From Oopsacas minuta (lineage: Eukaryota; Animalia; Porifera): DNA of 64,000 bases. Below, piece after piece: positions 14,374 to 26,990 of the stretch. Where the stretch lies: the NCBI GenBank assembly GCA_024704765.1, contig JAKMXF010000365.1, positions 994,131-1,058,130 of the forward strand, in the 5' to 3' direction. A program made the translations under genes and the position numbers. Position 1 is the first letter of the stretch. Each line of letters starts with the position of its first letter. The notes under the pieces are model-generated. The model ran no database searches and had not been told where the DNA came from. It saw only the letters and a program-made list of their open reading frames with translations.

Positions 14374-16809
14374 CTAAAACACACGTATTTTGTCCTGTTG
14401 CACAAGGACAAGATTCTCATCTATTAGAAGGACAGTGATAAATACCATGAATATAGCGAATGCTGACAGAACATGCCAGATGTCATGATCATCATAAAAG
14501 TTAAGGAAAATGCAATCATTATTCAACTCTCTTGCGACTGCAGGACTCTCCTCCCAGTGGATTGATGTTTGTCCCCAGAAGTACAGTGCGAAAGCCCACA
14601 ATGCAAACGTCAATATCATCATCAACAATACGCACACGAACACGAATGGACGATGAAGAAATTCCTTCTTCGCAAACTTCTGAATCCAATAGTACAGAGT
14701 GTACAATAGCACATGGAGAATGAAGAGGTAGAAAATTGCAGAGGAGACTGTATCCAACAAATCTGGAATCCATAGAAGCGTTAATACAATGAGTGACAAA
14801 ACTAAAACAATGTAACACAAGAATATTCTAGACTTGTTATACAGAGGCCAAAATAATTGTCTCAATACTCGCAAAATGCTCTTATGATTCAACCAATCTT
14901 TATAATAGTAGTAGGGCAAGTTGCTGAGAAATAAATTATAAATCAGATAGATCTCGACCAATGTAAATACGATCAGTGCCAAGGTTAATATTATCCTTCC
15001 GGGGAAGTTGTCGTTATCCTGTCTGAATAGCGTTACATATGTGAAGAAAACAGCTATGGAAAGCATCACGAATATAGCAAAAGGGTATATTGTAGCTTCA
15101 GGGTTTCTATTTTTGTACAATCTTATGAATAACATAGTAGCGATGATATACATGAACGTAGTGTCGAACTGGTAATTAGTCAATGAGGGACAGAGATGAT
15201 AGACGCAACTCATAATGCCTTCAAAGAATAGAGCAAGAGCTAAACTATAATACAAGCCAAATACCTGTGGAATACCTGTAGTAGACAGACCATGAGATTT
15301 CAGTTCTCTCATAAAAGAAATATTCTTGATAACAACAATAATGAAAAAGAGGAAACTCAGCAGAAAATAGCTAACATTACTCCAAATGCTGTTAAATGCA
15401 AGAATGGAATTCAGCTCATGAGCACATTTGTAGTTGAAATAGCATATATCCTGGATGCCTGTTGTCCTAACTGCTTCATGATTGAGGTAAACTACCTGTA
15501 ATCCAGGAATAAAGTAGAATACGCCAACGATTATAACAAGGAAAATGTACATTACAGCATTTCTATTCAAATATCTCAGAGGGCTTAAGTTTAAATCGCT
15601 CAATGCAATTTCCTTCTCGTTTATAATATTGTAGTAGTAAGCTCCTCTCACACGATTATTTAACACTCCGTTTGAAATACTACTCTTATACATTTCAAGA
15701 TAGTCACTACTCGATCCTGCAGGATTTTCAACTGAAGATTCCATTTGTTGATCTAAGGTGATAGATTGCATTTCACCTGTTTCTGCTACCTCTTGCAATT
15801 CAACATGCTTCTGTTCACTCACATTATCATTGTCTTCATGTGCTCTAGAAATAGGAATTCTTAAAAATAGAGAGAAATGCTTCATTAATTTCGGGAAAAA
15901 CCTCGCAATTATCAACTCAAATCCTATAATAAATGCAAACAGCACATATGCTAAGAAGAAGATTGCGGGCATGACAAGGATGGGGACCCAGAATTCAGTA
16001 CTCCCCGCGTTGACCACTAGGGATATATTCTTTTGGAAATGAGGTGACGAGATGTTCGTAGAAAACTCAACAGAGGTTTGGCATTCAATGGCTGGCAGAG
16101 GTATGAGGAACACAGCCATGCGACCTTCTAGGAAGTCTGAGCGTCTCACTCTGAGATCTGCTACTCCCCTCATAGTCATTTCATAGTCAGGAATTTGTCT
16201 GCTGGAGCGTTTGGTAAAATCTGGAGGGCATGAGAAGCTAGCAATTCTTACAAGAGAACAAAGTTCTGAAACAGAATTCAGATGCACTTCTACAATTGGT
16301 ATATCAAAAGGAATATCCAAAACAAAATAAGCCGAAAAGGAGGAAGAAATTGAAGTAGTAGCTTGTTGATCTATCTGTATTTGGTTGGGATAAAACCTTG
16401 AAACTTTTAACTTATATCGTATTGGATTCACGGAAAAGGTTTGTACTCTAACTGTAATAAAATTTACAGTATTATTCAGTTGAGAGGGACAAGCTGTTCT
16501 AGAAGTTGTTGTTATTATCTCATCGGGGATTGAATAGAAGGTTGTAGGAAGCGACCAAGCTTCTACATAAGACTGATGGGAAGCGTATATTTCTATGGGA
16601 GATGTGGTATCGTTAGAAAACACAGCTGTTTCGATTCGAAACGATTGAACAGGGAAGGAAAATTCGTAGATATGGATAGAATTATTAGAAATGACTGCAG
16701 CATACTCTTTATCAATTGAACCTATGATGGTATCTGACAATATAACTGAACTACATATCTGTATTATGCTCAAAAGGAAGCAGGAAATAATACACACATA
16801 TGCCTTCAT
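14374..16809 (-). CDS. SIDT: SID-1 transmembrane family protein (SIDT1/2-like), 811 aa, single exon
   Basis: Signal peptide, large ectodomain and multiple TM helices. Conserved CYFNYKCAH, FNSIWSNVSY, GIMSCVYHLCPS..NYQFDT, CIFLNFYDDHDIWH and C-terminal DKIRVF. First ATG is 16809 (the track start is TTG). Confidence 0.95.
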   Translation of the reverse strand: MKAYVCIISCFLLSIIQICSSVILSDTIIGSIDKEYAAVISNNSIHIYEFSFPVQSFRIETAVFSNDTTSPIEIYASHQSYVEAWSLPTTFYSIPDEIITTTSRTACPSQLNNTVNFITVRVQTFSVNPIRYKLKVSRFYPNQIQIDQQATTSISSSFSAYFVLDIPFDIPIVEVHLNSVSELCSLVRIASFSCPPDFTKRSSRQIPDYEMTMRGVADLRVRRSDFLEGRMAVFLIPLPAIECQTSVEFSTNISSPHFQKNISLVVNAGSTEFWVPILVMPAIFFLAYVLFAFIIGFELIIARFFPKLMKHFSLFLRIPISRAHEDNDNVSEQKHVELQEVAETGEMQSITLDQQMESSVENPAGSSSDYLEMYKSSISNGVLNNRVRGAYYYNIINEKEIALSDLNLSPLRYLNRNAVMYIFLVIIVGVFYFIPGLQVVYLNHEAVRTTGIQDICYFNYKCAHELNSILAFNSIWSNVSYFLLSFLFFIIVVIKNISFMRELKSHGLSTTGIPQVFGLYYSLALALFFEGIMSCVYHLCPSLTNYQFDTTFMYIIATMLFIRLYKNRNPEATIYPFAIFVMLSIAVFFTYVTLFRQDNDNFPGRIILTLALIVFTLVEIYLIYNLFLSNLPYYYYKDWLNHKSILRVLRQLFWPLYNKSRIFLCYIVLVLSLIVLTLLWIPDLLDTVSSAIFYLFILHVLLYTLYYWIQKFAKKEFLHRPFVFVCVLLMMILTFALWAFALYFWGQTSIHWEESPAVARELNNDCIFLNFYDDHDIWHVLSAFAIFMVFITVLLIDENLVLVQQDKIRVF

Positions 16810-17491
16810 TATATATGTAATGTCCAATTTCTAACTATTTTTTCTAATGTTTTATAGGGAAAAATTAATTGATTAGTTGGTTGGCATATAAATACACGTA
16901 AGTATAAAATTTAATTCGTTTTGGTTGTGTTCTGATAAATTAAAAGATAACTACATTTTTATCTTCATACAGCAATTAATATCCTTAGCTGGAAATGCCA
17001 GCAATCTTCATTTTAATTAATGAATCAAAGAAATTAGAAATAATTACGTCTTGTGGCTGTATTTACTAGAATATTCATACTTTTAACCGATTACGGTCGA
17101 AGTGTCACTTTCGTAACGAAAAGGAACACTCAAAGTTTACCACTTACTTATTTAACCAATTCCCCTACCTAAATTGAGATTTCAGCACCTTTTTCGTAAG
17201 AATGTGACAGTTCGACGTAATCGGGTTATAGTAGAGTAATTTTGAAAATTGCTGTGTCATGAAGCAGTCATTTTAGAAGGAATTTTGCGACGTTGCCATA
17301 GCAAAAACATTTTCAAAAATACGAGAGCTTCGCTCCGTCACTTTTTTGAGAAATTACTTCTCAAATCTATTCAGTAATTAGCTCCCACTTATATCTAATT
17401 TATTCGAAAAATCCTGGTTATCAAAAATTTCGAAAAAAACGCTAATTGAAATTCACCCATTTTGCAATTTAGAAACTAAAATTAATAGGAA

Positions 17492-20367: not shown

Positions 20368-23300
20368 ATGTCTTATCCCTCTGATCAGACAGGAGAGGGA
20401 TCTCAATGGAACGGGACTGCTCTCTTAGCTCAATCCGGGAACAAACGTATGATTATAACTCCATCAGCTCGCGCTTCTTTGAAATCAATGGATCAACGTG
20501 TAGGAGCTCATGAAATGCTGGACGACACTACTTCTATAACTTCTGGTATTAGTATTACTAGCCAGGGAATACTAGCTGGTAATGTATACAGAGTAGGAGG
20601 TCTAACACGTGAGCTTGTAGAGAGACTTCAGGAATCTGAGAGAGAAGGGTCACTAGCAGCTCTCCCTCCGAACATTGATTATATTGAGTTGAAACCTGGA
20701 GATGCTCCTCCTAAGGGATTTGCTTGGGAAGCTCATTCAAAAAAGAAAGGTACAAATTTTACTGTTAACTGCATAGAACTTTAATGTATTAGAAATTACT
20801 GTATTGCTCTGAATAAGCGCGCGCTATGTTTATTCAGGGAAGTACAGTATGTTCTTTCTCAGAAAGCAATTGAAAGATTTAGTGAAGAATTTATTCCATT
20901 ATTTCCTATTGAAAGGAAATAGTTAGTTACTTTTGGAGATGTTTCTTATCAAGATAACGTTGCACCCCTATCTCCGGTTGTTGCTAAAACACGAGACTGG
21001 ACGGATAGCTGGGGTATCCCGGGGAATGACTCATACTTGGGAGGATTTAGTAACATACTTTGTGGATAACCTTCTTCCCGCAGCGACCTAGCAAGCGAAG
21101 CAAACTAGTATCACTCAATATACTAATGAATTATTCTACACAATTTGCACCCAAATCAGTGAATATAACATTCATATTACTGGTCATTAATTAACAATCT
21201 TAAATAATATTATTTGCATTCCAATCATTTGAAGTGGTATAATAAGCAACCTACTGTAATTATCAGAAAATTCAAATACTGATATATACTGATTGAATTA
21301 TTCACTGTTTCTGGTCAGCAGATATTTCAAATAATTACAAATCGGTTATGATGCTATCCATATCCATACTCTTATACAAATATCAGTTAGAAATATACCT
21401 TCATATTCTATCTTATCATTTTATTGGTGAGAAGCTTAATCGGATAGGTTATGTCACTCAAATATTATAATTCTTAATTTTATACATTTAGATTACTTAT
21501 TCCAACACCGCGGGGCCAAATCTTATGCATAATAAGGAGATTCCATCTTAAGCGATATTTAGTACAAATCTTATAAGGTTTATTTATTGGGATCAGCGGC
21601 TTGGTAATTATAAGTAATTACTAGCAAACTGACTTTGTTCTTACACGATGCTAGCCAAATAATCTTACTAAATATTAATAGATGTTAGGATAGTGGTTTG
21701 CCAAAATAGAAGTAGGGGGAGGCGCTCCCTATTCAAGTTGTCCTTTTTCTTAAAATCTCGGTGAAACCGGCTCTCAGGGATATAATTAGGGCGCCCCCCC
21801 CACTTCGGTTTTTGGCAAAGCACCATTGCTGCTGTTAGATATTTTTCACACCACATACTGCATTCCTGTTTATGAGGATAATATTTCCTAGATTTTACCA
21901 TGGATGAGATATTCCTTATAACGAATATACTATACCATAGTTTATATCACATGTGGGCCTCGGTGTTCGTTTGAAAAGGGCATGAATGCAGCCCAAAGAA
22001 ATTTTCTGACACTTTTAGCCTTCATTGACTTGAGATAAGTATATTTTTTTCTTCCATATACAACCCTACCTTTCTATAACGGCTTTGTAATCCAAGTAAA
22101 TATTTAATTGCAATTACACTTGAATTATTATTCAACACCTTATATTCTATAGACTTGTACAGTTGTATATATTTGTTCTTTTTATTATTCCAATAATGTT
22201 TAGTAATGTTGTTGGTTTCAGATTTCTCGTATTCTGGTGTAGTGTCAAGTTTAAATAGACACATTTGGTTTCTCTTTTCGTGCTACTACAAGCATTGAAA
22301 CGGACTTCGAGCGCATTATGAAGAGTAATGACTGAATTTGACAAATTTAATATTAAAAAGACTATGTATTTCGGGGACTTAGAATGGCTTATTTTGTAAT
22401 AAACTGAAAAGACTTGCAAGTTCACTTTTATACAATCATGGTAGTAGAAAACATCCTCAAGTTTTGCGGCCCTCCAAGTCGGCTGCAAATTTCACTGCGG
22501 CCCAAAAGCTAACATTTGTGCCCACCCCTGGTCTCTATGCTATATCATTACTTCTTTCTTAGGAAAACCGCGCATAAACCTAATCCCTGAGAGTATTCGT
22601 AAGATAGCTGGTATTCGTAGTGTCTCTGAGAAATCTCTCGCTGCTCTAGGCCCCTCACTACTGGAGGAGGGAGATACAGACAGTGCACCTTGGGATAGCA
22701 ATACCAAACAAATGTTTCTGAGACAAGTGGAGATTTGGAAGGCGCCAGGAGACACTTTAGGATTTTACGTGAGTAGAGGAGATGGTCATGAACGGAGTGA
22801 TGGAGTGTTTCTCTCTCGTCTGGTGTTAGGTAGCTATGTTGAAAGACTGGGACTACTTCAGGTGGGAGACGAGATCTTAGCTATCAATGGTATTCCTGTA
22901 GGGGACATGCCTCTACAGAATGTTGTTATGTTATTGAAGTATGTGCAGAGGCTGGAACTCACGGTGAAGGTCAGTTTATACTAATACATTATAACAAGTG
23001 GGTGGGGCACAGGTTATTAAACTAGGTATACTTACATTAATGAGGTCAGGCACACTCAATTTCAGGTGAAGCACAGGCCCCACCCTCCCGCCGTCTCTGA
23101 ATATAACTTATTAATATTATCACCATATTCATATTAATTACCTCGCTTGATAGCCGAGACAGTCAACTCGAAAGCTAGAATATCAATAATATCTCAATTA
23201 CTGTATCATAATTCTATTTGTGTAAACTGGTGCATACTAGCTTGGCTAATTTGTTAGACTACATGTCTGCTTAATATACCGGTACCGGCGGGACGTATAA

Positions 23301-24818
23301 CAAAGATGACATAAATGATTCAGAGGGCATAAATACATACGTACCTTACTTAATTAAGTATACCTAATTAGTTGTAGTTGGACTTGAAGGTGTTGGTGTA
23401 ATTTGGGTTATGTCGTGTAATATTTTGCGGAACTCCTACTAATCTTGCTAATACAGATATTAATACAGTATAAATGTATAGGTATCAGACAAATTATGGT
23501 TTGTATTTAGAAGGTATTACTATGGTATGTACTGCTCTTTACAAATCTATACAGTTATTGTATACACAATATTACTGTATATAGGCACTCCATGGTTCCA
23601 TTGAATACATTAAACACCACTCTAGTATTTTCCTTAATGATTGGGTTAATGCAGTGGTTCCCAACCTGGGGTCCATGGACCCTTTGGCGGTCCACGGGCG
23701 AAAATGGTTATAACCGCTGGGTTAATGGATATTCTCCACTATATCAATCTATATTATTAAAACTCAATTATTGTGTGTTTTTGGCAGTGAAATCAATGGA
23801 CAAAATACCCCGATTTCAACTGTATTTATAACGATTTTCTCACACCTCATGAGAGGATTTGTAATAATAATTATGCTATGACTGTATATTACCAATATAG
23901 GCTCCTTCAGGCTGGTCACATCTCTACAGGAAGTTTAACAAACGTCCTAAACCCTCAAGGAAGGCTCCACCTGTACCTAGTGCTCCTTTCAACCATTCCA
24001 AACCTATCCTCACTCCATTTGCTCCTGTCTCAGATAAATCTAGACCTACTCATCCTCATCCCCAGCTCGTACCATTTCCTTCTGTGTCTGCTCCCGTCGA
24101 TTCTAGACAGAGATCTTCTAGCTCTACGGACCCTCCCACAGAGCCTATAGTACCACCCTCCGGTATAATGCCCATTCACTCACGAGGTTTCTCAGATATT
24201 TCCATGCCTAATCCTGTCTCATACCGACCTGTGGAATCAGATTTCTTAGCTGTTGCAGATCACCAGCACTCTCTATCTTCCACTGGTAAATTCCAATACA
24301 CCGGTCGGGTTAATAAGCACTATTTGCATCGGGAACCTGAACACTTATTGAATGCAGAACAGCTGGAGTTCATGGCCCAGCTGGAGAGAGAGGAACATCT
24401 ATTCGAATCAGAGGATACAACACAAGATACTCAGCATGTATTTGTAGATCATGCTAATATTGATGTAAGTTGTTTGCCTGTAGTCCTCCCCCTGGATGTC
24501 ACAGATGTCATACCTGTCATACCTGTCATTAAGTCGGATGATTCTACTCACACTGATACTGAGCAGGATTTGGATTCCACACCTCCTCTCCTTCAGCTGT
24601 TTCCTCCTGACCACATTGATACAGACCAGGAGTCTGTTCCAACCACAGAAGTAATTGACTCAGAATCTAACCCTGACTTTGAGCGTGCAGACACACCTAG
24701 TATTGTTTCTATCAACTTATCCAGAGAAGGTTCAATTGTAGAACTCCCTCCTCTACACGATCAGTTGGCAGATGTACCACAGGATGATCAACTGCTTCCG
24801 AAAATATATATCAAATGA
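20368..24818 (+). CDS. Syd-1/RhoGAP100F-like PDZ protein lacking C2 and RhoGAP domains; predicted exons 20368-20749, 20954-21049, 22563-22969, 23901-24818; 600 aa
   Basis: All three GT-AG introns are phase-consistent (1,1,0) and give a 1803-nt ORF. The PDZ (VEIWKAPGDTLGFYVSRGDGHERSDGVFLSRLVLGS...LLQVGDEILAING) and the upstream block ILAGNVYRVGGLTRELVERLQESE resemble Drosophila Syd-1 as I recall it. The C-terminal exon is Pro-rich then acidic. Confidence 0.75.
22250..22532 (+). mobile_element. hAT (SPIN/Buster/Charlie-like) 3' remnant inside intron 2
   Basis: Frameshifted C-terminal peptide HLVSL/RATTSIETDFERIMKSND*, followed by a Charlie-type end (tgcggccc...tgcccacccctg). Confidence 0.5.
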
Positions 24819-25112: not shown

Positions 25113-26990
25113 ATGTCCATCTTTCAGAGCAATCTCACACGTGTGAACAAAGGTCCTGGATTCTACCAAATCAACAAGAATTACATTCTCAGGTTTCCTG
25201 ATGAGCTCATCAAGACTGCAGACAAAGCCAAGCCCCTGTCTACAATAAAGGGCATAACTTGCCTCCCAGAGAAGAAATTCGAGATAAAGTTTTCAAGCGG
25301 TCCACGATGGCTCATGCAAGCTCCCTCGTCTAAGATTCAGATGAAGTGGGTAGTAGAGATTGCACAACTCACGGGTTGTAGCATTGAGGACAAGATGAAA
25401 CCAGAGGTTGTCCCTGAACCTGTACCTGTACGAACCCCAACAAGCAAAACGGTATACGTAGGGAAATCGCAGATTTCTGGACTTCATAATCCTCGTTCTC
25501 AAACTCAGAGAATGGCTAAACCTAAATCACTTGATAGTGATAATGCCAAGGTTACGAATCCAATCTTTCACAATGCACATTCTTTTCACGCTCTCCCTTG
25601 TCATGAATTTCCTGTCTGTGTTGATACTCTACAAGATCAGTCCCAGAAATTACCTACAATGTATCAACAGATGTCACCCAACCTCAAGCCATCAACAATA
25701 GCCACCCACACTGAAGATATGTCTCCACTACCTCGGGGGCCAGAATCTGCTACCGTGCTAGAAATTGGTGCCAATCTGATGGAGTGTATACCCCCTCCAG
25801 ATTCTACTCTTGATGATGGTATAGTTCTTAACAAGGATGAGAACAGGGAAGAAGCTGGTAACTATGTTCTAGAGGATGAGTACCTAGACATGCAGCTCCC
25901 TGAGCTCATACTTAATACAGGAAAACTACTACTAGAAGATACAGCATCAAAAAGCCCTAAACATCCCAATACTGAGAATATTCTGGACAAGAAAGATCTC
26001 TACTCCTTCCTAACTAACTCTAGAGAGCTGAGTGATATACTCTCTACTCCATACTCTGCTGTTGACAAGTCTGGGAAGTTATTCGCTAGAGCTGAGAATA
26101 CTCAAGATCCTTACTCACATATAGGGGAGGAAGTTAGGCCTGGGGTTAATGTGCCTGCTGTTAAAGAGGAAGAACTCAAGATCTTAGAAGTTATAGGACA
26201 GGGAGCATTCGGAGAGGTCTCCCTTGCTGAGTGGACACCTGACTCTTCTGACAAGATTATGGTAGCTATTAAGAATGTAAAGCAAGGAATCAGTGATGTT
26301 CAGATAAAGAACTTCTTGAAAGAAATCTTGCTAATGTCTCACATGTCTCACATGAATGTACTCGGAATATGTGGAGTTGTAGACAGAGGTGCTGATATAA
26401 ACCCATGGATCGTTATGCCCTTCTGTAAGCACGGCTCTTTGAAGTCTTATCTCCGAGACATGGATGATATGCCTTCCCTCAAGAAGCTTATATACTTCTG
26501 TTCAGACATAGCATACGGTATGTCCTATCTAGCGTCACAGAACATAATACACAGAGACCTAGCTGCCAGGAACATAGTGGTGGATGAAAATGAGATTTGT
26601 AAGGTGACAGATTTCGGTTTTTCTCGGCAGTTAGATTCTGAGATATACGTGTCTAGCAATACGCAAGAGGTCCCGGTCAGGTGGACAGCTCCTGAAGCAT
26701 TGAATGAAGCTAAACATTCTGTGTCAAGCGATGTGTGGAGTTACGGTGTTGTCATGTGGGAGATATTCACCAAGTGCGTAAGACAACCTTATGACCATCT
26801 TAACACCAATAACTATATGATATTACACAATCTGAACAAGGGAGAGAGACTACAGCCTCCTAACGAATGTCCTAATTGTATTTCTGGTATCATGCGTGCC
26901 TGTTGGATACACAATCCTGAATCCAGACCCAGTTTTGATTTGATATTCTCTCTCCTCTTCCAGATGATAAGGAGATTGGACAGATCTTAG
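25113..26990 (+). CDS. Non-receptor tyrosine kinase with N-terminal PH-like domain, 625 aa, single ORF
   Basis: Kinase motifs IGQGAFGEV, VAIK, HRDLAARN, DFG, PVRWTAPE, SDVWSYGV. The N-terminal ~95 aa has a PH pattern ending FEIKF...WLMQAPS..QMKWVVEI. No TM, SH2 or SH3 seen. Confidence 0.9.
   Translation: MSIFQSNLTRVNKGPGFYQINKNYILRFPDELIKTADKAKPLSTIKGITCLPEKKFEIKFSSGPRWLMQAPSSKIQMKWVVEIAQLTGCSIEDKMKPEVVPEPVPVRTPTSKTVYVGKSQISGLHNPRSQTQRMAKPKSLDSDNAKVTNPIFHNAHSFHALPCHEFPVCVDTLQDQSQKLPTMYQQMSPNLKPSTIATHTEDMSPLPRGPESATVLEIGANLMECIPPPDSTLDDGIVLNKDENREEAGNYVLEDEYLDMQLPELILNTGKLLLEDTASKSPKHPNTENILDKKDLYSFLTNSRELSDILSTPYSAVDKSGKLFARAENTQDPYSHIGEEVRPGVNVPAVKEEELKILEVIGQGAFGEVSLAEWTPDSSDKIMVAIKNVKQGISDVQIKNFLKEILLMSHMSHMNVLGICGVVDRGADINPWIVMPFCKHGSLKSYLRDMDDMPSLKKLIYFCSDIAYGMSYLASQNIIHRDLAARNIVVDENEICKVTDFGFSRQLDSEIYVSSNTQEVPVRWTAPEALNEAKHSVSSDVWSYGVVMWEIFTKCVRQPYDHLNTNNYMILHNLNKGERLQPPNECPNCISGIMRACWIHNPESRPSFDLIFSLLFQMIRRLDRS

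What the first reader, a model, noticed from the sequence alone, without database searches (positions are those of the whole stretch)
20368..24818. Syd-1 (presynaptic scaffold)-like PDZ gene without C2/RhoGAP domains in a probably nerveless animal
Four phase-consistent exons encode 600 aa. Two separate segments resemble Drosophila Syd-1/RhoGAP100F as I recall it: the pre-PDZ block (ILAGNVYRVGGLTRELVERLQESE vs VVQGDFRKVSGISTEIFRQIEAVE) and the PDZ (GDGHERSDGVFLSR vs GNGADRTDGVFISR), which is closer than Par-6. Syd-1 PDZ binds neurexin and seeds active zones with liprin-alpha. Here the C2 and RhoGAP domains are replaced by a Pro-rich/acidic tail. If the host is a sponge, this may be a pre-neuronal or derived scaffold form of Syd-1.
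Basis: partly seen in the sequence, partly recalled or inferred. Interest (0 to 1): 0.75.

Follow-up and report, generated by a model that had tools for sequence, protein, structure and literature searches.

The report
Glass-sponge Syd-1 without its GAP half
The glass sponge Oopsacas minuta keeps only the front half (two short conserved blocks plus the PDZ docking domain) of Syd-1, a protein that organises nerve terminals in flies and worms, and has lost the enzyme half that demosponges and bilaterians still carry.

Summary
The gene is real. It has three exons rather than four (20368-20749, 22563-22969, 23901-24818) and encodes 568 aa rather than 600. Start, splice sites and stop are conserved in five other assemblies that are probably glass sponges, and all exons are under strong purifying selection.

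The genome is Oopsacas minuta (Hexactinellida). A search of 1.84 billion proteins with exon 2 found one tight family at 77-103 bits. It includes Drosophila RhoGAP100F (Syd-1), Saccoglossus "RhoGAP100F-like", Geodia "RhoGAP100F" and, near-identical to one hit, Dysidea "syd-1-like". Other PDZ types score 34 bits or less per domain, and Par-6 scores 36-46.

Both pre-PDZ blocks also align with Syd-1, in the same order.

The gene ends at a conserved stop and is followed by an unrelated tyrosine-kinase gene. I found no C2_SYDE domain and no SYDE-type RhoGAP anywhere in the 61-Mb assembly. Demosponges keep PDZ plus RhoGAP, so the glass-sponge form is a derived truncation, not an ancestral one.

The likely function is a GAP-less PDZ adaptor, and that part is inferred. 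The PDZ-only tree could not exclude a Par-6 sister position, but profile scores, indels and flanking blocks do. The scan has no note of this on other DNA. The exons were never joined.

The parts
20368..20749 (+). Exon 1 (127 codons + 1 nt, phase 1). The conserved start is MS(S/Y)P. The N-terminal ~60 aa vary; residues 66-127 are nearly invariant among glass-sponge orthologues.
   Evidence: Six orthologous exon ORFs at 69-86% identity. Donor AAAG|gt is at the same position in all five loci. dN/dS is about 0.08.
20569..20655 (+). Pre-PDZ block 1 (residues I68-L96: ILAGNVYRVGGLTRELVERLQESEREGSL). It matches the Syd-1 block DFRKVSGISSEIFRQIEAVEND of bilaterians and the ..ILAQLKAVEND.. block of demosponge-type Syd-1.
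   Evidence: hhalign P=0.0019 against the bilaterian block and P=0.029 against the sponge-type block. The bilaterian and sponge-type blocks match each other at P=3e-6. Order relative to block 2 and the PDZ is the same in all. AF2 on exon 1 alone gives only a weak strand plus helix here (pLDDT ~50).
20750..22562 (+). Intron 1 (gt..ag, 1813 nt). The orthologous introns are 56-595 nt.
22563..22969 (+). Exon 2 (407 nt, ends in phase 0), 84-90% identical among five assemblies.
   Evidence: dN/dS is about 0.02 with synonymous sites saturated.
22565..22636 (+). Pre-PDZ block 2 (KPRINLIPESIRKIAGIRSVSEKS). It matches K.L.I.LVEGSFRRIAGIRE, which lies directly before the PDZ of demosponge-type Syd-1. It also resembles the Par-6 semi-CRIB (P.DFR.VS.I).
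   Evidence: hhalign P=6.6e-5, 24 columns, 38% identity. tblastn with Dysidea and other sponge Syd-1 proteins spans 133-134 aa of exon 2, including this block. Against the Par-6 semi-CRIB P=0.041. AF2 pLDDT is below 50.
22712..22969 (+). Syd-1-type PDZ domain (86 aa). It keeps the xLGF carboxylate-binding loop, has the short beta2-beta3 loop GDGHERSDG, and ends YVQRLELTVK as in sponge Syd-1.
   Evidence: Pfam PDZ E=1e-11. AF2 pLDDT is 84-93. Identity is 59% to the Geodia RhoGAP100F PDZ, 46-54% to other Syd-1 and 37-44% to Par-6. Syd-1 profile 113 bits, Par-6 profile 44 bits.
22970..23900 (+). Intron 2 (gt..ag, 931 nt)
23901..24818 (+). Exon 3 (305 codons + TGA): a lineage-specific tail with no Pfam family. 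It is Pro-rich and basic at the start and acidic at the end, with conserved islands.
   Evidence: 42-61% identity over its full length in four orthologues. No Pfam hit. The stop is at the same position in four loci and one codon earlier in L004 (…KIYIS*). dN/dS is about 0.17.
23958..23978 (+). Conserved class I SH3-ligand-like motif [RK]xxPxxP (RKAPPVP) just after the PDZ.
   Evidence: Present in all five orthologues (alignment A4). Reading it as an SH3 ligand is an inference from the consensus.
24105..24125 (+). Conserved basophilic phosphosite-like run RQRSSSS (RxRxxS).
   Evidence: R69, R71, S73 and S74 are invariant in A4. The kinase-site reading is inferred.
24792..24818 (+). Conserved C-terminus LLPKIYIK followed by TGA.

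Best explanation
This is the glass-sponge descendant of the metazoan Syd-1 (RhoGAP100F/SYDE) gene, and it has lost the C2-RhoGAP half. About 265 residues remain, in the same order as the front of sponge Syd-1: pre-PDZ block 1, a spacer of similar length, pre-PDZ block 2, and a Syd-1-type PDZ. These are joined to a 305-aa, probably disordered tail found only in these glass sponges, which carries a conserved [RK]xxPxxP motif, basophilic Ser clusters and an acidic end.

Shown: homology to Syd-1, absence of C2 and RhoGAP, conservation of the truncated structure across glass sponges, and purifying selection.

Inferred: it acts as a non-enzymatic adaptor. The PDZ would dock the hydrophobic C-terminus of a membrane protein, and possibly phosphoinositides as reported for C. 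elegans SYD-1. The conserved pre-PDZ blocks would bind a partner that Syd-1 proteins share. The tail would recruit SH3 proteins and be regulated by phosphorylation. A GAP-independent scaffold role has a precedent: in Drosophila, Syd-1's GAP activity is needed for Brp/ELKS clustering but not for neurexin-1 clustering. Neurexin was reported missing in Oopsacas, so the PDZ ligand must be something else.
For: Gene model and conservation.

Syd-1 identity of the PDZ:
- An hmmsearch of 1.84 billion proteins with the exon-2 profile gave about 100 single-PDZ proteins at 77-103 bits. Domains of multi-PDZ proteins scored 34 bits or less.
- Of the nine single-PDZ hits scanned, eight had PDZ plus RhoGAP and three of those also had C2_SYDE. 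A local HMM found RhoGAP in 28 of the 100 single-PDZ hits.
- Named members are D. ananassae RhoGAP100F, Saccoglossus RhoGAP100F-like, Geodia barretti RhoGAP100F and Dysidea avara syd-1-like.
- Matches are reciprocal: Syd-1 proteins and a sponge-Syd-1 profile hit exon 2 as their best PDZ in the whole genome (127 bits, against 61 for Par-6).
- Profile classification: 113-119 bits under the Syd-1 PDZ profile, 43-45 under the Par-6 profile.
- The PDZ has the Syd-1 state at both Par-6-specific insertions.

Pre-PDZ blocks.

No GAP half:
- The stop is conserved, and neither the 64-kb window nor six orthologous loci contain RhoGAP or C2.
- The nearest RhoGAPs on the contig are more than 200 kb away.
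- PF25336 has no hit in the genome at E<=1.
- Nothing matches the linker/C2 part of the sponge Syd-1 profile.
- The eight RhoGAP loci that scored best for Syd-1 queries all belong to other types: ARHGAP12/15-like, GMIP-like, ARAP, RhoGAP-SH3, PH-RhoGAP, myosin IX, BAR-RhoGAP and ARHGAP19-like.

Literature: GAP-independent neurexin clustering (Spinner 2018, as cited in PMC7397595); PIP2 binding by the SYD-1 PDZ and C2 (bioRxiv 10.1101/2023.11.17.567618); neurexin not found in Oopsacas (PMC10280926).
Against: - The PDZ-only tree (93 columns) is poorly resolved. An AU test does not reject a glass-sponge + Par-6 clade (p=0.64), and the constrained tree even had a slightly higher likelihood.
- The exon-1 block is only moderately significant (P=0.0019 and 0.029), and HMMER alone did not detect it.
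- Absence of a SYDE-type GAP rests on one draft assembly and on similarity ranking. The other glass-sponge assemblies were seen only within +/-10 kb of the gene.
- There is no RNA evidence for the junctions.
- The pre-PDZ parts and exon 1 are not confidently folded by AlphaFold.
- Every functional statement (ligand class, SH3 binding, phosphorylation) is inference.
Confidence: 0.8

Rival explanations
1. The GAP half still exists, either as a separate, very diverged or unassembled gene (gene fission) or as distant exons joined by alternative splicing. On this view the PDZ-only appearance is an artefact of annotation or assembly.
For: One draft assembly only. Sponge-type Syd-1 RhoGAP and C2 domains are themselves diverged: Pfam C2_SYDE is not detected in most of them, so a glass-sponge copy could escape detection.
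Against: The stop and the C-terminal LLPKIYI(K/S) motif are conserved in five assemblies. The next gene is a tyrosine kinase in the window and in three of the relatives. There is no C2 or RhoGAP in the window or the orthologous loci. PF25336 has no hit in the genome, and nothing matches the linker/C2 of the sponge Syd-1 profile. The eight RhoGAP loci that scored best for Syd-1 queries belong to other types. The window runs to the end of contig C365.
Confidence: 0.07
2. The PDZ-only form is ancestral. On this view C2-RhoGAP was fused to a Syd-1-like PDZ gene later, and glass sponges preserve the state before fusion.
For: Sponges branch early. The PDZ and its flanking blocks look like a self-contained module, and the Par-6 CRIB-PDZ is its nearest relative.
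Against: Demosponges (Dysidea avara by name, plus many sponge-type proteins that cluster with Geodia) and bilaterians share PDZ plus RhoGAP, and some sponge-type members show a weak C2_SYDE match. In the PDZ tree the glass-sponge PDZ sits inside the sponge-type group (SH-aLRT 80). By established sponge phylogeny (my knowledge), glass sponges and demosponges are sister classes, so one loss is the most parsimonious reading.
Confidence: 0.05
3. The gene does not descend from Syd-1. It would be a lineage-specific or Par-6-related single-PDZ protein that merely resembles Syd-1.
For: The AU test does not reject glass sponge + Par-6. Par-6 is the best solved structural and sequence neighbour. Block 2 resembles the Par-6 semi-CRIB.
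Against: Profile scores are 113-119 bits (Syd-1) against 43-45 (Par-6). Both Par-6-specific insertions are absent. No PB1 domain. Oopsacas has its own complete Par-6. Two flanking blocks lie in the same order as in Syd-1. Best hits are reciprocal.
Confidence: 0.04
4. It is a truncated paralogue: a partial duplicate of the front half of Syd-1 took on a new role, and the full-length parent gene was later lost in glass sponges. This contrasts with truncation of the single gene in place.
For: The tail has no detectable similarity to the PDZ-to-C2 linker of sponge Syd-1. The stem branch of the glass-sponge PDZ is long (0.94).
Against: There is only one Syd-1-type PDZ in the genome. Nothing distinguishes this history from truncation in place, and the end state is the same.
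Confidence: 0.12

Closest known systems
Invertebrate Syd-1 / RhoGAP100F (C. elegans SYD-1, Drosophila Syd-1; PDZ-C2-RhoGAP)
   Same: The PDZ is of the same subfamily: 46-54% identity, the G(D/N)G..R.DG(V/I)F(I/L)SR loop and the same loop lengths. The pre-PDZ block (F/Y)R.V(S/G)G(I/L)(S/T).E(I/L)...(I/L)...E is shared.
   Different: No C2 and no RhoGAP, and 568 aa against about 1,100-1,850. The tail is unrelated. The host has no neurons, and its genome paper did not find neurexin, the known PDZ ligand.
Demosponge-type Syd-1 (Dysidea avara 'syd-1-like' XP protein P0344; Geodia barretti 'RhoGAP100F' P0021; unnamed ENA proteins P0024, P0035, P0037, P0041 and others)
   Same: These are the closest relatives. 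The PDZ is up to 59% identical with the same YVQRL.LTVK ending. Block 2 (SFRRIAGIRE against SIRKIAGIRS) and block 1 lie in the same order with similar spacing.
   Different: They continue through a linker (with a weak C2_SYDE match in P0037 and P0041) into a RhoGAP domain. The glass-sponge gene stops after its own 305-aa tail. The glass-sponge protein also has about 20 extra residues between block 2 and the PDZ.
Vertebrate SYDE1/SYDE2 (mSYD1A/B)
   Same: Same gene family by descent. A disordered region serves scaffold functions (my knowledge of Wentzel et al. 2013; domain layout as in PMC8918327).
   Different: The loss is complementary: vertebrates lost the PDZ and kept C2-RhoGAP, while glass sponges kept the PDZ and lost C2-RhoGAP.
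Par-6 (PB1 - semi-CRIB - PDZ)
   Same: It is the nearest other PDZ family. Syd-1 plus Par-6 PDZs separate from multi-PDZ domains with SH-aLRT 98, and Par-6 is the top solved structural match (1nf3_C). A (D/S)(F/I)R.(V/I)(S/A).I motif lies before the PDZ.
   Different: No PB1. The PDZ lacks the 7-aa and 1-aa insertions of Par-6. It scores 44 bits under the Par-6 profile, against 171-204 for real Par-6. Oopsacas has a separate Par-6 at C295.

Membership tests
Syd-1 / RhoGAP100F / SYDE | Syd-1-subfamily PDZ domain (invertebrate members) | tested here: met
   77-103 bits to family members in a 1.84-billion-protein search. 113 bits under a family profile built without glass sponges, against 62-72 for Par-6 PDZs. 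Reciprocal best hit in the genome.
Syd-1 / RhoGAP100F / SYDE | Conserved pre-PDZ blocks in the same order as the PDZ | tested here: met
   Block 2 P=6.6e-5 against sponge-type. Block 1 P=0.0019 against bilaterian and 0.029 against sponge-type. Same order and similar spacing. The strength of this evidence is moderate.
Syd-1 / RhoGAP100F / SYDE | C2 domain of SYDE type (PF25336) | tested here: not met
   No Pfam hit in any exon. No PF25336 hit in the whole genome at E<=1. tblastn with Syd-1 proteins finds nothing beyond exon 2 in the window or the orthologous loci.
Syd-1 / RhoGAP100F / SYDE | RhoGAP domain (PF00620) C-terminal to the C2 | tested here: not met
   The gene ends at a conserved stop. 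There is no RhoGAP within the window, and the nearest on the contig are more than 200 kb away. The eight RhoGAP loci that scored best for Syd-1 queries belong to other types.
Syd-1 / RhoGAP100F / SYDE | PDZ binds the neurexin C-terminus; presynaptic active-zone assembly with liprin-alpha | not testable with these tools
   The host has no synapses, and the genome paper did not find neurexin or neuroligin (PMC10280926).
Par-6 | N-terminal PB1 domain | tested here: not met
   No PB1 (PF00564) in exon 1 at E<=0.1. The true Oopsacas Par-6 has PB1 plus PDZ.
Par-6 | Semi-CRIB motif directly before the PDZ | tested here: inconclusive
   Block 2, LIPESIRKIAGI, aligns to the Par-6 P.DFR.VS.I at only P=0.041, and it lies 36 rather than 18 residues before the first strand. 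The bilaterian Syd-1 DFRKVSGI matches the Par-6 motif at P=1.9e-5 over 8 columns.
Par-6 | Par-6-type PDZ (long beta2-beta3 loop, high score under the Par-6 profile) | tested here: not met
   Lacks both Par-6 insertions. 43-45 bits against 171-204 for Par-6. The PDZ-only AU test alone could not exclude a sister position.
PDZ domain (PF00595) | Profile match above the curated cut-off and a PDZ fold | tested here: met
   45.4 bits against a cut-off of 23.2. AF2 gives six strands and two helices at pLDDT 84-93. Foldseek probability is 1.00 to many PDZ structures.

The most novel reading that the evidence does not exclude
The part glass sponges kept may be a Par-6-like 'semi-CRIB + PDZ' module that binds a Rho-family GTPase. 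Syd-1 proteins carry one or two copies of a hydrophobic-R-basic-hydrophobic-(S/A/G)-G-hydrophobic motif before the PDZ: DFRKVSGI in flies, SFRRIAGI in demosponges, and VYRVGGL plus PESIRKIAGI in glass sponges. These resemble the Par-6 semi-CRIB P.DFR.VS.I, and the Syd-1 and Par-6 PDZs are each other's nearest relatives. If so, Syd-1 and Par-6 would share a CRIB-PDZ ancestor. The GAP-less glass-sponge protein would then be a GTPase effector or scaffold rather than a plain PDZ adaptor, and full-length Syd-1 would combine GTPase-sensing and GAP modules in one protein. I found no paper that makes this link.
Probability: 0.2. Interest if true: 0.7.

Novelty: new variant of a known kind. Interest (0 to 1): 0.5.

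Why it matters
Syd-1 is one of the earliest organisers of the presynaptic active zone in worms and flies. This result puts a clear Syd-1 lineage in sponges. In demosponges it has the PDZ-RhoGAP layout, which public annotation names but which I did not find discussed in the held literature.

One nerveless, syncytial lineage has kept only the docking half, under very strong constraint (dN/dS about 0.02 for the PDZ exon), for a long time. That amounts to a natural separation-of-function allele. It argues that the pre-PDZ-plus-PDZ module has a conserved job that needs neither GAP activity nor neurexin nor neurons. It also gives a small, tractable protein with which to find that ancestral partner.

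The loss mirrors the vertebrate one, where the PDZ was lost and C2-RhoGAP kept, which shows that the two halves can work apart.

Tried and rejected
- **Exon 1, sequence and fold searches.** The PDB sequence search found nothing below E=1. The ESM Atlas gave no usable hit. Pfam gave nothing. AF2 on exon 1 alone gave mean pLDDT 40, so no fold search was worthwhile.
- **Exon-1 and exon-3 profiles against the top hits.** HMMER against the 150 best PDZ hits gave no individually significant match. Weak exon-1 hits did recur at the same place 60-80 aa before the PDZ, and that pointed me to the block.
- **Generic C2 near RhoGAP.** Cross-checking generic C2 (PF00168) positions against RhoGAP positions in the genome found no same-strand neighbours.
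- **Possible orphan GAP half at C88:286278-288068 (L016).** Its RhoGAP is diverged and aligned a little upstream of the domain with one sponge Syd-1. I rejected it: no C2, a lower score under the Syd-1 profile than ARAP or myosin IX, and 25 of 30 Atlas neighbours are ARHGAP19.
- **PDZ-only maximum-likelihood trees.** With one Par-6 sequence, Par-6 fell inside Syd-1 on a long branch. With 16, Par-6 and the glass sponges each formed 100% clades and the glass sponges sat in the sponge-type Syd-1 group (SH-aLRT 80). The AU test still could not reject glass sponge + Par-6. I therefore rest the classification on profile scores, indels and flanking blocks, not on the tree.
Rejected in favour of three exons and 568 aa.
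- **Annotated Oopsacas protein.** Cluster look-ups of three hexactinellid exon-level hits found no named or full-length member.
- The three exons were never joined, so the 568-aa protein was not searched, aligned or folded as a whole.

Full report
**What is at the locus.** The window is AT-rich eukaryotic DNA (33-42% GC). On the + strand, three open stretches carry the coding sequence. Reading the DNA gives:
- exon 1: 20368-20749, ending AAAG|gt, phase 1
- exon 2: 22563-22969, starting ag|GA and ending AAG|gt, phase 0
- exon 3: 23901-24818, starting ag|GCT and ending in TGA

That is 1,704 coding nt, or 568 codons. A word search with exon 1 found six exon-sized ORFs at 69-86% identity in unnamed ENA/Logan assemblies. 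I fetched their contigs. tblastn of each window exon then aligned end to end with four of them: exon 1 at 69-81%, exon 2 at 84-90%, exon 3 at 42-61% (alignments).

The start codon, both donors, both acceptors and the stop lie at the same positions in all five loci. Two orthologues use GC donors, and L004 ends KIYIS* instead of KIYIK*. Synonymous sites are saturated (pS 0.57-0.88) while non-synonymous change stays low. Where dS can be estimated, dN/dS is about 0.02 for exon 2, 0.08 for exon 1 and 0.17 for exon 3.

So this is a real, constrained gene.

**The host.** The assembly has 61,460,524 bases in 365 contigs, and the window is the last 64 kb of contig C365. The second-best PDZ match in the genome, at C295:224257, lies in an ORF with a Par-6 semi-CRIB and PDZ. 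That ORF is 100% identical to NCBI 'PAR6 [Oopsacas minuta]' on a contig of 542,108 bases, which is the length of C295. The published O. minuta genome has 365 scaffolds at 36% GC (PMC10280926). The host is therefore the glass sponge Oopsacas minuta, a nerveless syncytial animal. The five other assemblies that carry orthologues are probably other hexactinellids. That is an inference from their similarity, since they are unnamed.

**Classifying the PDZ.**
- Pfam finds only a PDZ, in exon 2 (E=1e-11), and nothing in exons 1 or 3.
- In the PDB, the best single-domain sequence matches are Par-6 PDZs at 38-40 bits, and no Syd-1 structure is present.
- I spent the one exhaustive search on a profile of exon 2 from five species. 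The result is bimodal. About 100 proteins with a single PDZ score 77-103 bits, while the multi-PDZ proteins in the list reach only 13-34 bits per domain.
- Pfam scans of nine of the single-PDZ hits gave PDZ plus RhoGAP in eight, with C2_SYDE (PF25336) in three. With local profiles, 28 of the 100 have a RhoGAP, and no hit shorter than about 600 aa does; 17 have a C2_SYDE match.
- Names from the source databases: P0144 is Drosophila ananassae RhoGAP100F (the fly Syd-1), P0051 is Saccoglossus RhoGAP100F-like, and P0021 is Geodia barretti 'Rho GTPase-activating protein 100F'. P0344, near-identical to P0027, is 'rho GTPase-activating protein syd-1-like [Dysidea avara]' with PDZ plus RhoGAP.
- The relation is reciprocal. 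Saccoglossus Syd-1, an unnamed sponge-type Syd-1 and a seven-sequence sponge-type profile all pick exon 2 as their best PDZ in the Oopsacas genome. The profile scores it at 127 bits, against 61 for Par-6.

**Syd-1 or Par-6.**
- PDZ identity to the window is 59% for Geodia, 49-54% for other sponge-type proteins, 46-51% for bilaterian Syd-1 and 37-44% for Par-6. Par-6 PDZs carry a 7-residue and a 1-residue insertion that the window's PDZ and all Syd-1 PDZs lack.
- A Syd-1 PDZ profile built without glass sponges scores the five glass-sponge PDZs at 113-119 bits. Its own members score 121-152 and 120 Par-6 PDZs score 62-72. A Par-6 profile scores the glass-sponge PDZs at 43-45 bits, against 171-204 for Par-6 and 37-66 for Syd-1.
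- In a maximum-likelihood tree with 16 Par-6 PDZs, Par-6 and the glass sponges are each 100% clades. The glass sponges sit inside the sponge-type PDZ-RhoGAP group (SH-aLRT 80). Syd-1 plus Par-6 separate from multi-PDZ domains at 98.
- The tree alone is not decisive. With 93 columns and two long stems, an AU test does not reject a glass-sponge + Par-6 clade (p=0.64).

I therefore rest the assignment on the profile scores, the indels, the flanking blocks described next, and the presence of a separate, complete Par-6 in the same genome.

**The pre-PDZ region.** Inspecting the hits shows two conserved blocks.

Block 1:
- Arthropod-type and other bilaterian Syd-1 carry ..VVQ.DFRKVSGIS.EIFRQIEAVEND about 60-70 aa before the PDZ.
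- Sponge-type proteins carry ..(K/R).PP.ILAQLKAVEND..L.
- The window carries ILAGNVYRVGGLTRELVERLQESEREGSL, residues 68-96 of exon 1.

Block 2:
- Sponge-type proteins carry KSGK.L.I.LVEGSFRRIAGIRE about 19 aa before the PDZ.
- The start of exon 2 reads KPRINLIPESIRKIAGIRSVSEKS.
- hhalign gives P=6.6e-5 over 24 columns at 38% identity.
- tblastn with Dysidea and other sponge Syd-1 proteins covers 133-134 aa of exon 2, including this block (E about 1e-24).

Order and spacing (block 1, about 40-45 aa, block 2, PDZ) are the same as in sponge Syd-1. The glass sponges have about 20 extra residues between block 2 and the PDZ. AlphaFold models the PDZ confidently (pLDDT 84-93) but neither pre-PDZ part (below 50; exon 1 alone averages 40). 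That fits linear motifs, or elements that fold only on a partner. The closest solved structure is the Par-6 CRIB-PDZ bound to Cdc42 (1nf3_C).

**No C2 and no RhoGAP.**
- The gene ends at a conserved stop after a conserved LLPKIYI(K/S) terminus.
- 295 bp downstream begins a separate single-exon gene for a tyrosine kinase, and the same neighbour follows in three of the relatives. Upstream, on the other strand, is a SID-1 homologue.
- Syd-1 proteins from sponges, a hemichordate and a fly match nothing but exon 2 in the whole 64-kb window and in the six orthologous loci, even at E<=1.
- In the whole genome, PF25336 has no match at E<=1. No generic C2 lies next to a RhoGAP on the same strand. The sponge-Syd-1 profile matches nothing in its linker/C2 part.
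- The eight RhoGAP loci that scored best for Syd-1 queries all belong to other types:
  - SH3-PH-RhoGAP, with 198 bits to ARHGAP15
  - FCH-C1-RhoGAP (GMIP-like), RhoGAP-SH3 and PH-RhoGAP
  - ArfGAP-PH-RhoGAP-RA (ARAP)
  - myosin IX and BAR-RhoGAP
  - an ARHGAP19-like protein

Within the limits of one draft assembly, Oopsacas has no SYDE-type GAP.

**Direction of change.** Bilaterians and demosponge-type proteins share the PDZ-(C2)-RhoGAP layout, and the glass-sponge PDZ groups with the sponge-type proteins. The simplest history is therefore loss of the C-terminal half on the glass-sponge stem, with a new tail evolving in its place. The tail has no detectable similarity to the Syd-1 linker. Whether this happened in place or through a truncated duplicate cannot be told from these data. 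Vertebrates made the complementary loss: they have no PDZ and keep C2-RhoGAP (PMC8918327).

**How it probably works.** This section is inference. The PDZ keeps the xLGF carboxylate-binding loop. By alignment to PSD-95 PDZ3, recalled from memory and not tested here, the first position of helix B is Leu rather than His, as in Syd-1 and Par-6; the Syd-1 and Par-6 alignment is. I would therefore expect it to prefer hydrophobic (class II-like) C-termini.

Known Syd-1 biology gives precedents:
- The PDZ binds the neurexin tail.
- In flies, GAP activity is needed for Brp/ELKS clustering but not for neurexin-1 clustering (Spinner et al. 2018, cited in PMC7397595).
- In C. elegans, the PDZ and C2 both contact PIP2 (bioRxiv 10.1101/2023.11.17.567618).

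The Oopsacas paper did not find neurexin or neuroligin, so the ligand must be another membrane protein. The tail has a conserved [RK]xxPxxP motif right after the PDZ, an invariant R.R.SS run, further conserved Ser/Pro islands and an acidic end with Ser/Thr next to acidic residues. This is the make-up of a regulated, disordered recruiting arm. My best reading is a non-enzymatic membrane-proximal adaptor that preserves the GAP-independent scaffold function of Syd-1.

**A side hypothesis.**
- The Syd-1 motif DFRKVSGI matches the Par-6 semi-CRIB DFR.VS.I at P=1.9e-5, though over only 8 columns.
- Sponge block 2 lies about as far from the PDZ as the Par-6 semi-CRIB does.
- Glass-sponge block 2 (LIPESIRKIAGI) matches P.DFR.VS.I position for position, including the Pro, but only at P=0.041.
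- Together with the sister relation of the two PDZ families, this suggests that Syd-1 carries a Par-6-like GTPase-binding CRIB-PDZ module.
- I found no paper proposing this.
- I give it about 20%.

**Novelty and verdict.** Sponge Syd-1 homologues are named by automatic annotation (Geodia, Dysidea). I found no paper in the held library that discusses them, nor any GAP-less form, and the Oopsacas genome paper does not mention Syd-1. This is a new variant of a known kind, of moderate interest. Earlier notes of this scan cover only this same stretch and its neighbours in the window, not other DNA.

Noticed in passing
window 25113-26990 (+): A single-exon gene for a tyrosine kinase with a PH-like N-terminus (Pfam PK_Tyr_Ser-Thr, E=3e-83) lies 295 bp downstream of the Syd-1-like gene. 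The same neighbour follows the orthologous gene in three of the relatives (L001-L003) but not in L004. It is a separate gene and is already noted by the scan as s1-235808.
   Followed up: partly
window 14374-16827 (-): An 817-aa open frame with a full SID-1 dsRNA-channel domain (PF13965, E=1e-111) lies upstream on the opposite strand.
   Followed up: no
L001:10382-10383 and L003:10349-10350: Intron 1 of the orthologous gene uses a GC donor (AAAG|gcgagt) in two relatives, whereas the window, L002 and L004 use GT.
   Followed up: no
L007:8135-8842 (G000:C295:224134-224841): This is the last exon of Oopsacas Par-6 (semi-CRIB PQDFRQVSTI plus PDZ). Its PDZ is the second-closest PDZ in the genome to the Syd-1-like one. 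The Par-6 semi-CRIB resembles the DFRKVSGI block of bilaterian Syd-1 (hhalign P=1.9e-5 over 8 columns).
   Followed up: partly
protein P0021 (Geodia barretti CAI8026263.1, 530 aa): The public Geodia 'RhoGAP100F' model starts with a tyrosinase-domain fragment and has no RhoGAP. Its closest relative, P0025, has PDZ plus RhoGAP. The Geodia model looks chimeric or truncated.
   Followed up: no
G000: C343:308404, C330:157419, C365:782039, C222:1605376, C30:41869, C255:156567, C365:336414, C88:286695: A partial RhoGAP inventory of Oopsacas: ARHGAP12/15-like (SH3-PH-GAP), GMIP-like (FCH-C1-GAP), ARAP (ArfGAP-PH-GAP-RA), GAP-SH3, PH-GAP (ARHGAP21/23-like, 1554-aa open frame), myosin IX, BAR-GAP and ARHGAP19-like. 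Several are very long single open frames.
   Followed up: partly
L002:1-4700: Retrotransposon ORFs (RT, RNase H, integrase) and a THAP/transposase-like ORF lie upstream of the orthologous gene in one relative, so the upstream neighbourhood is not conserved.
   Followed up: no
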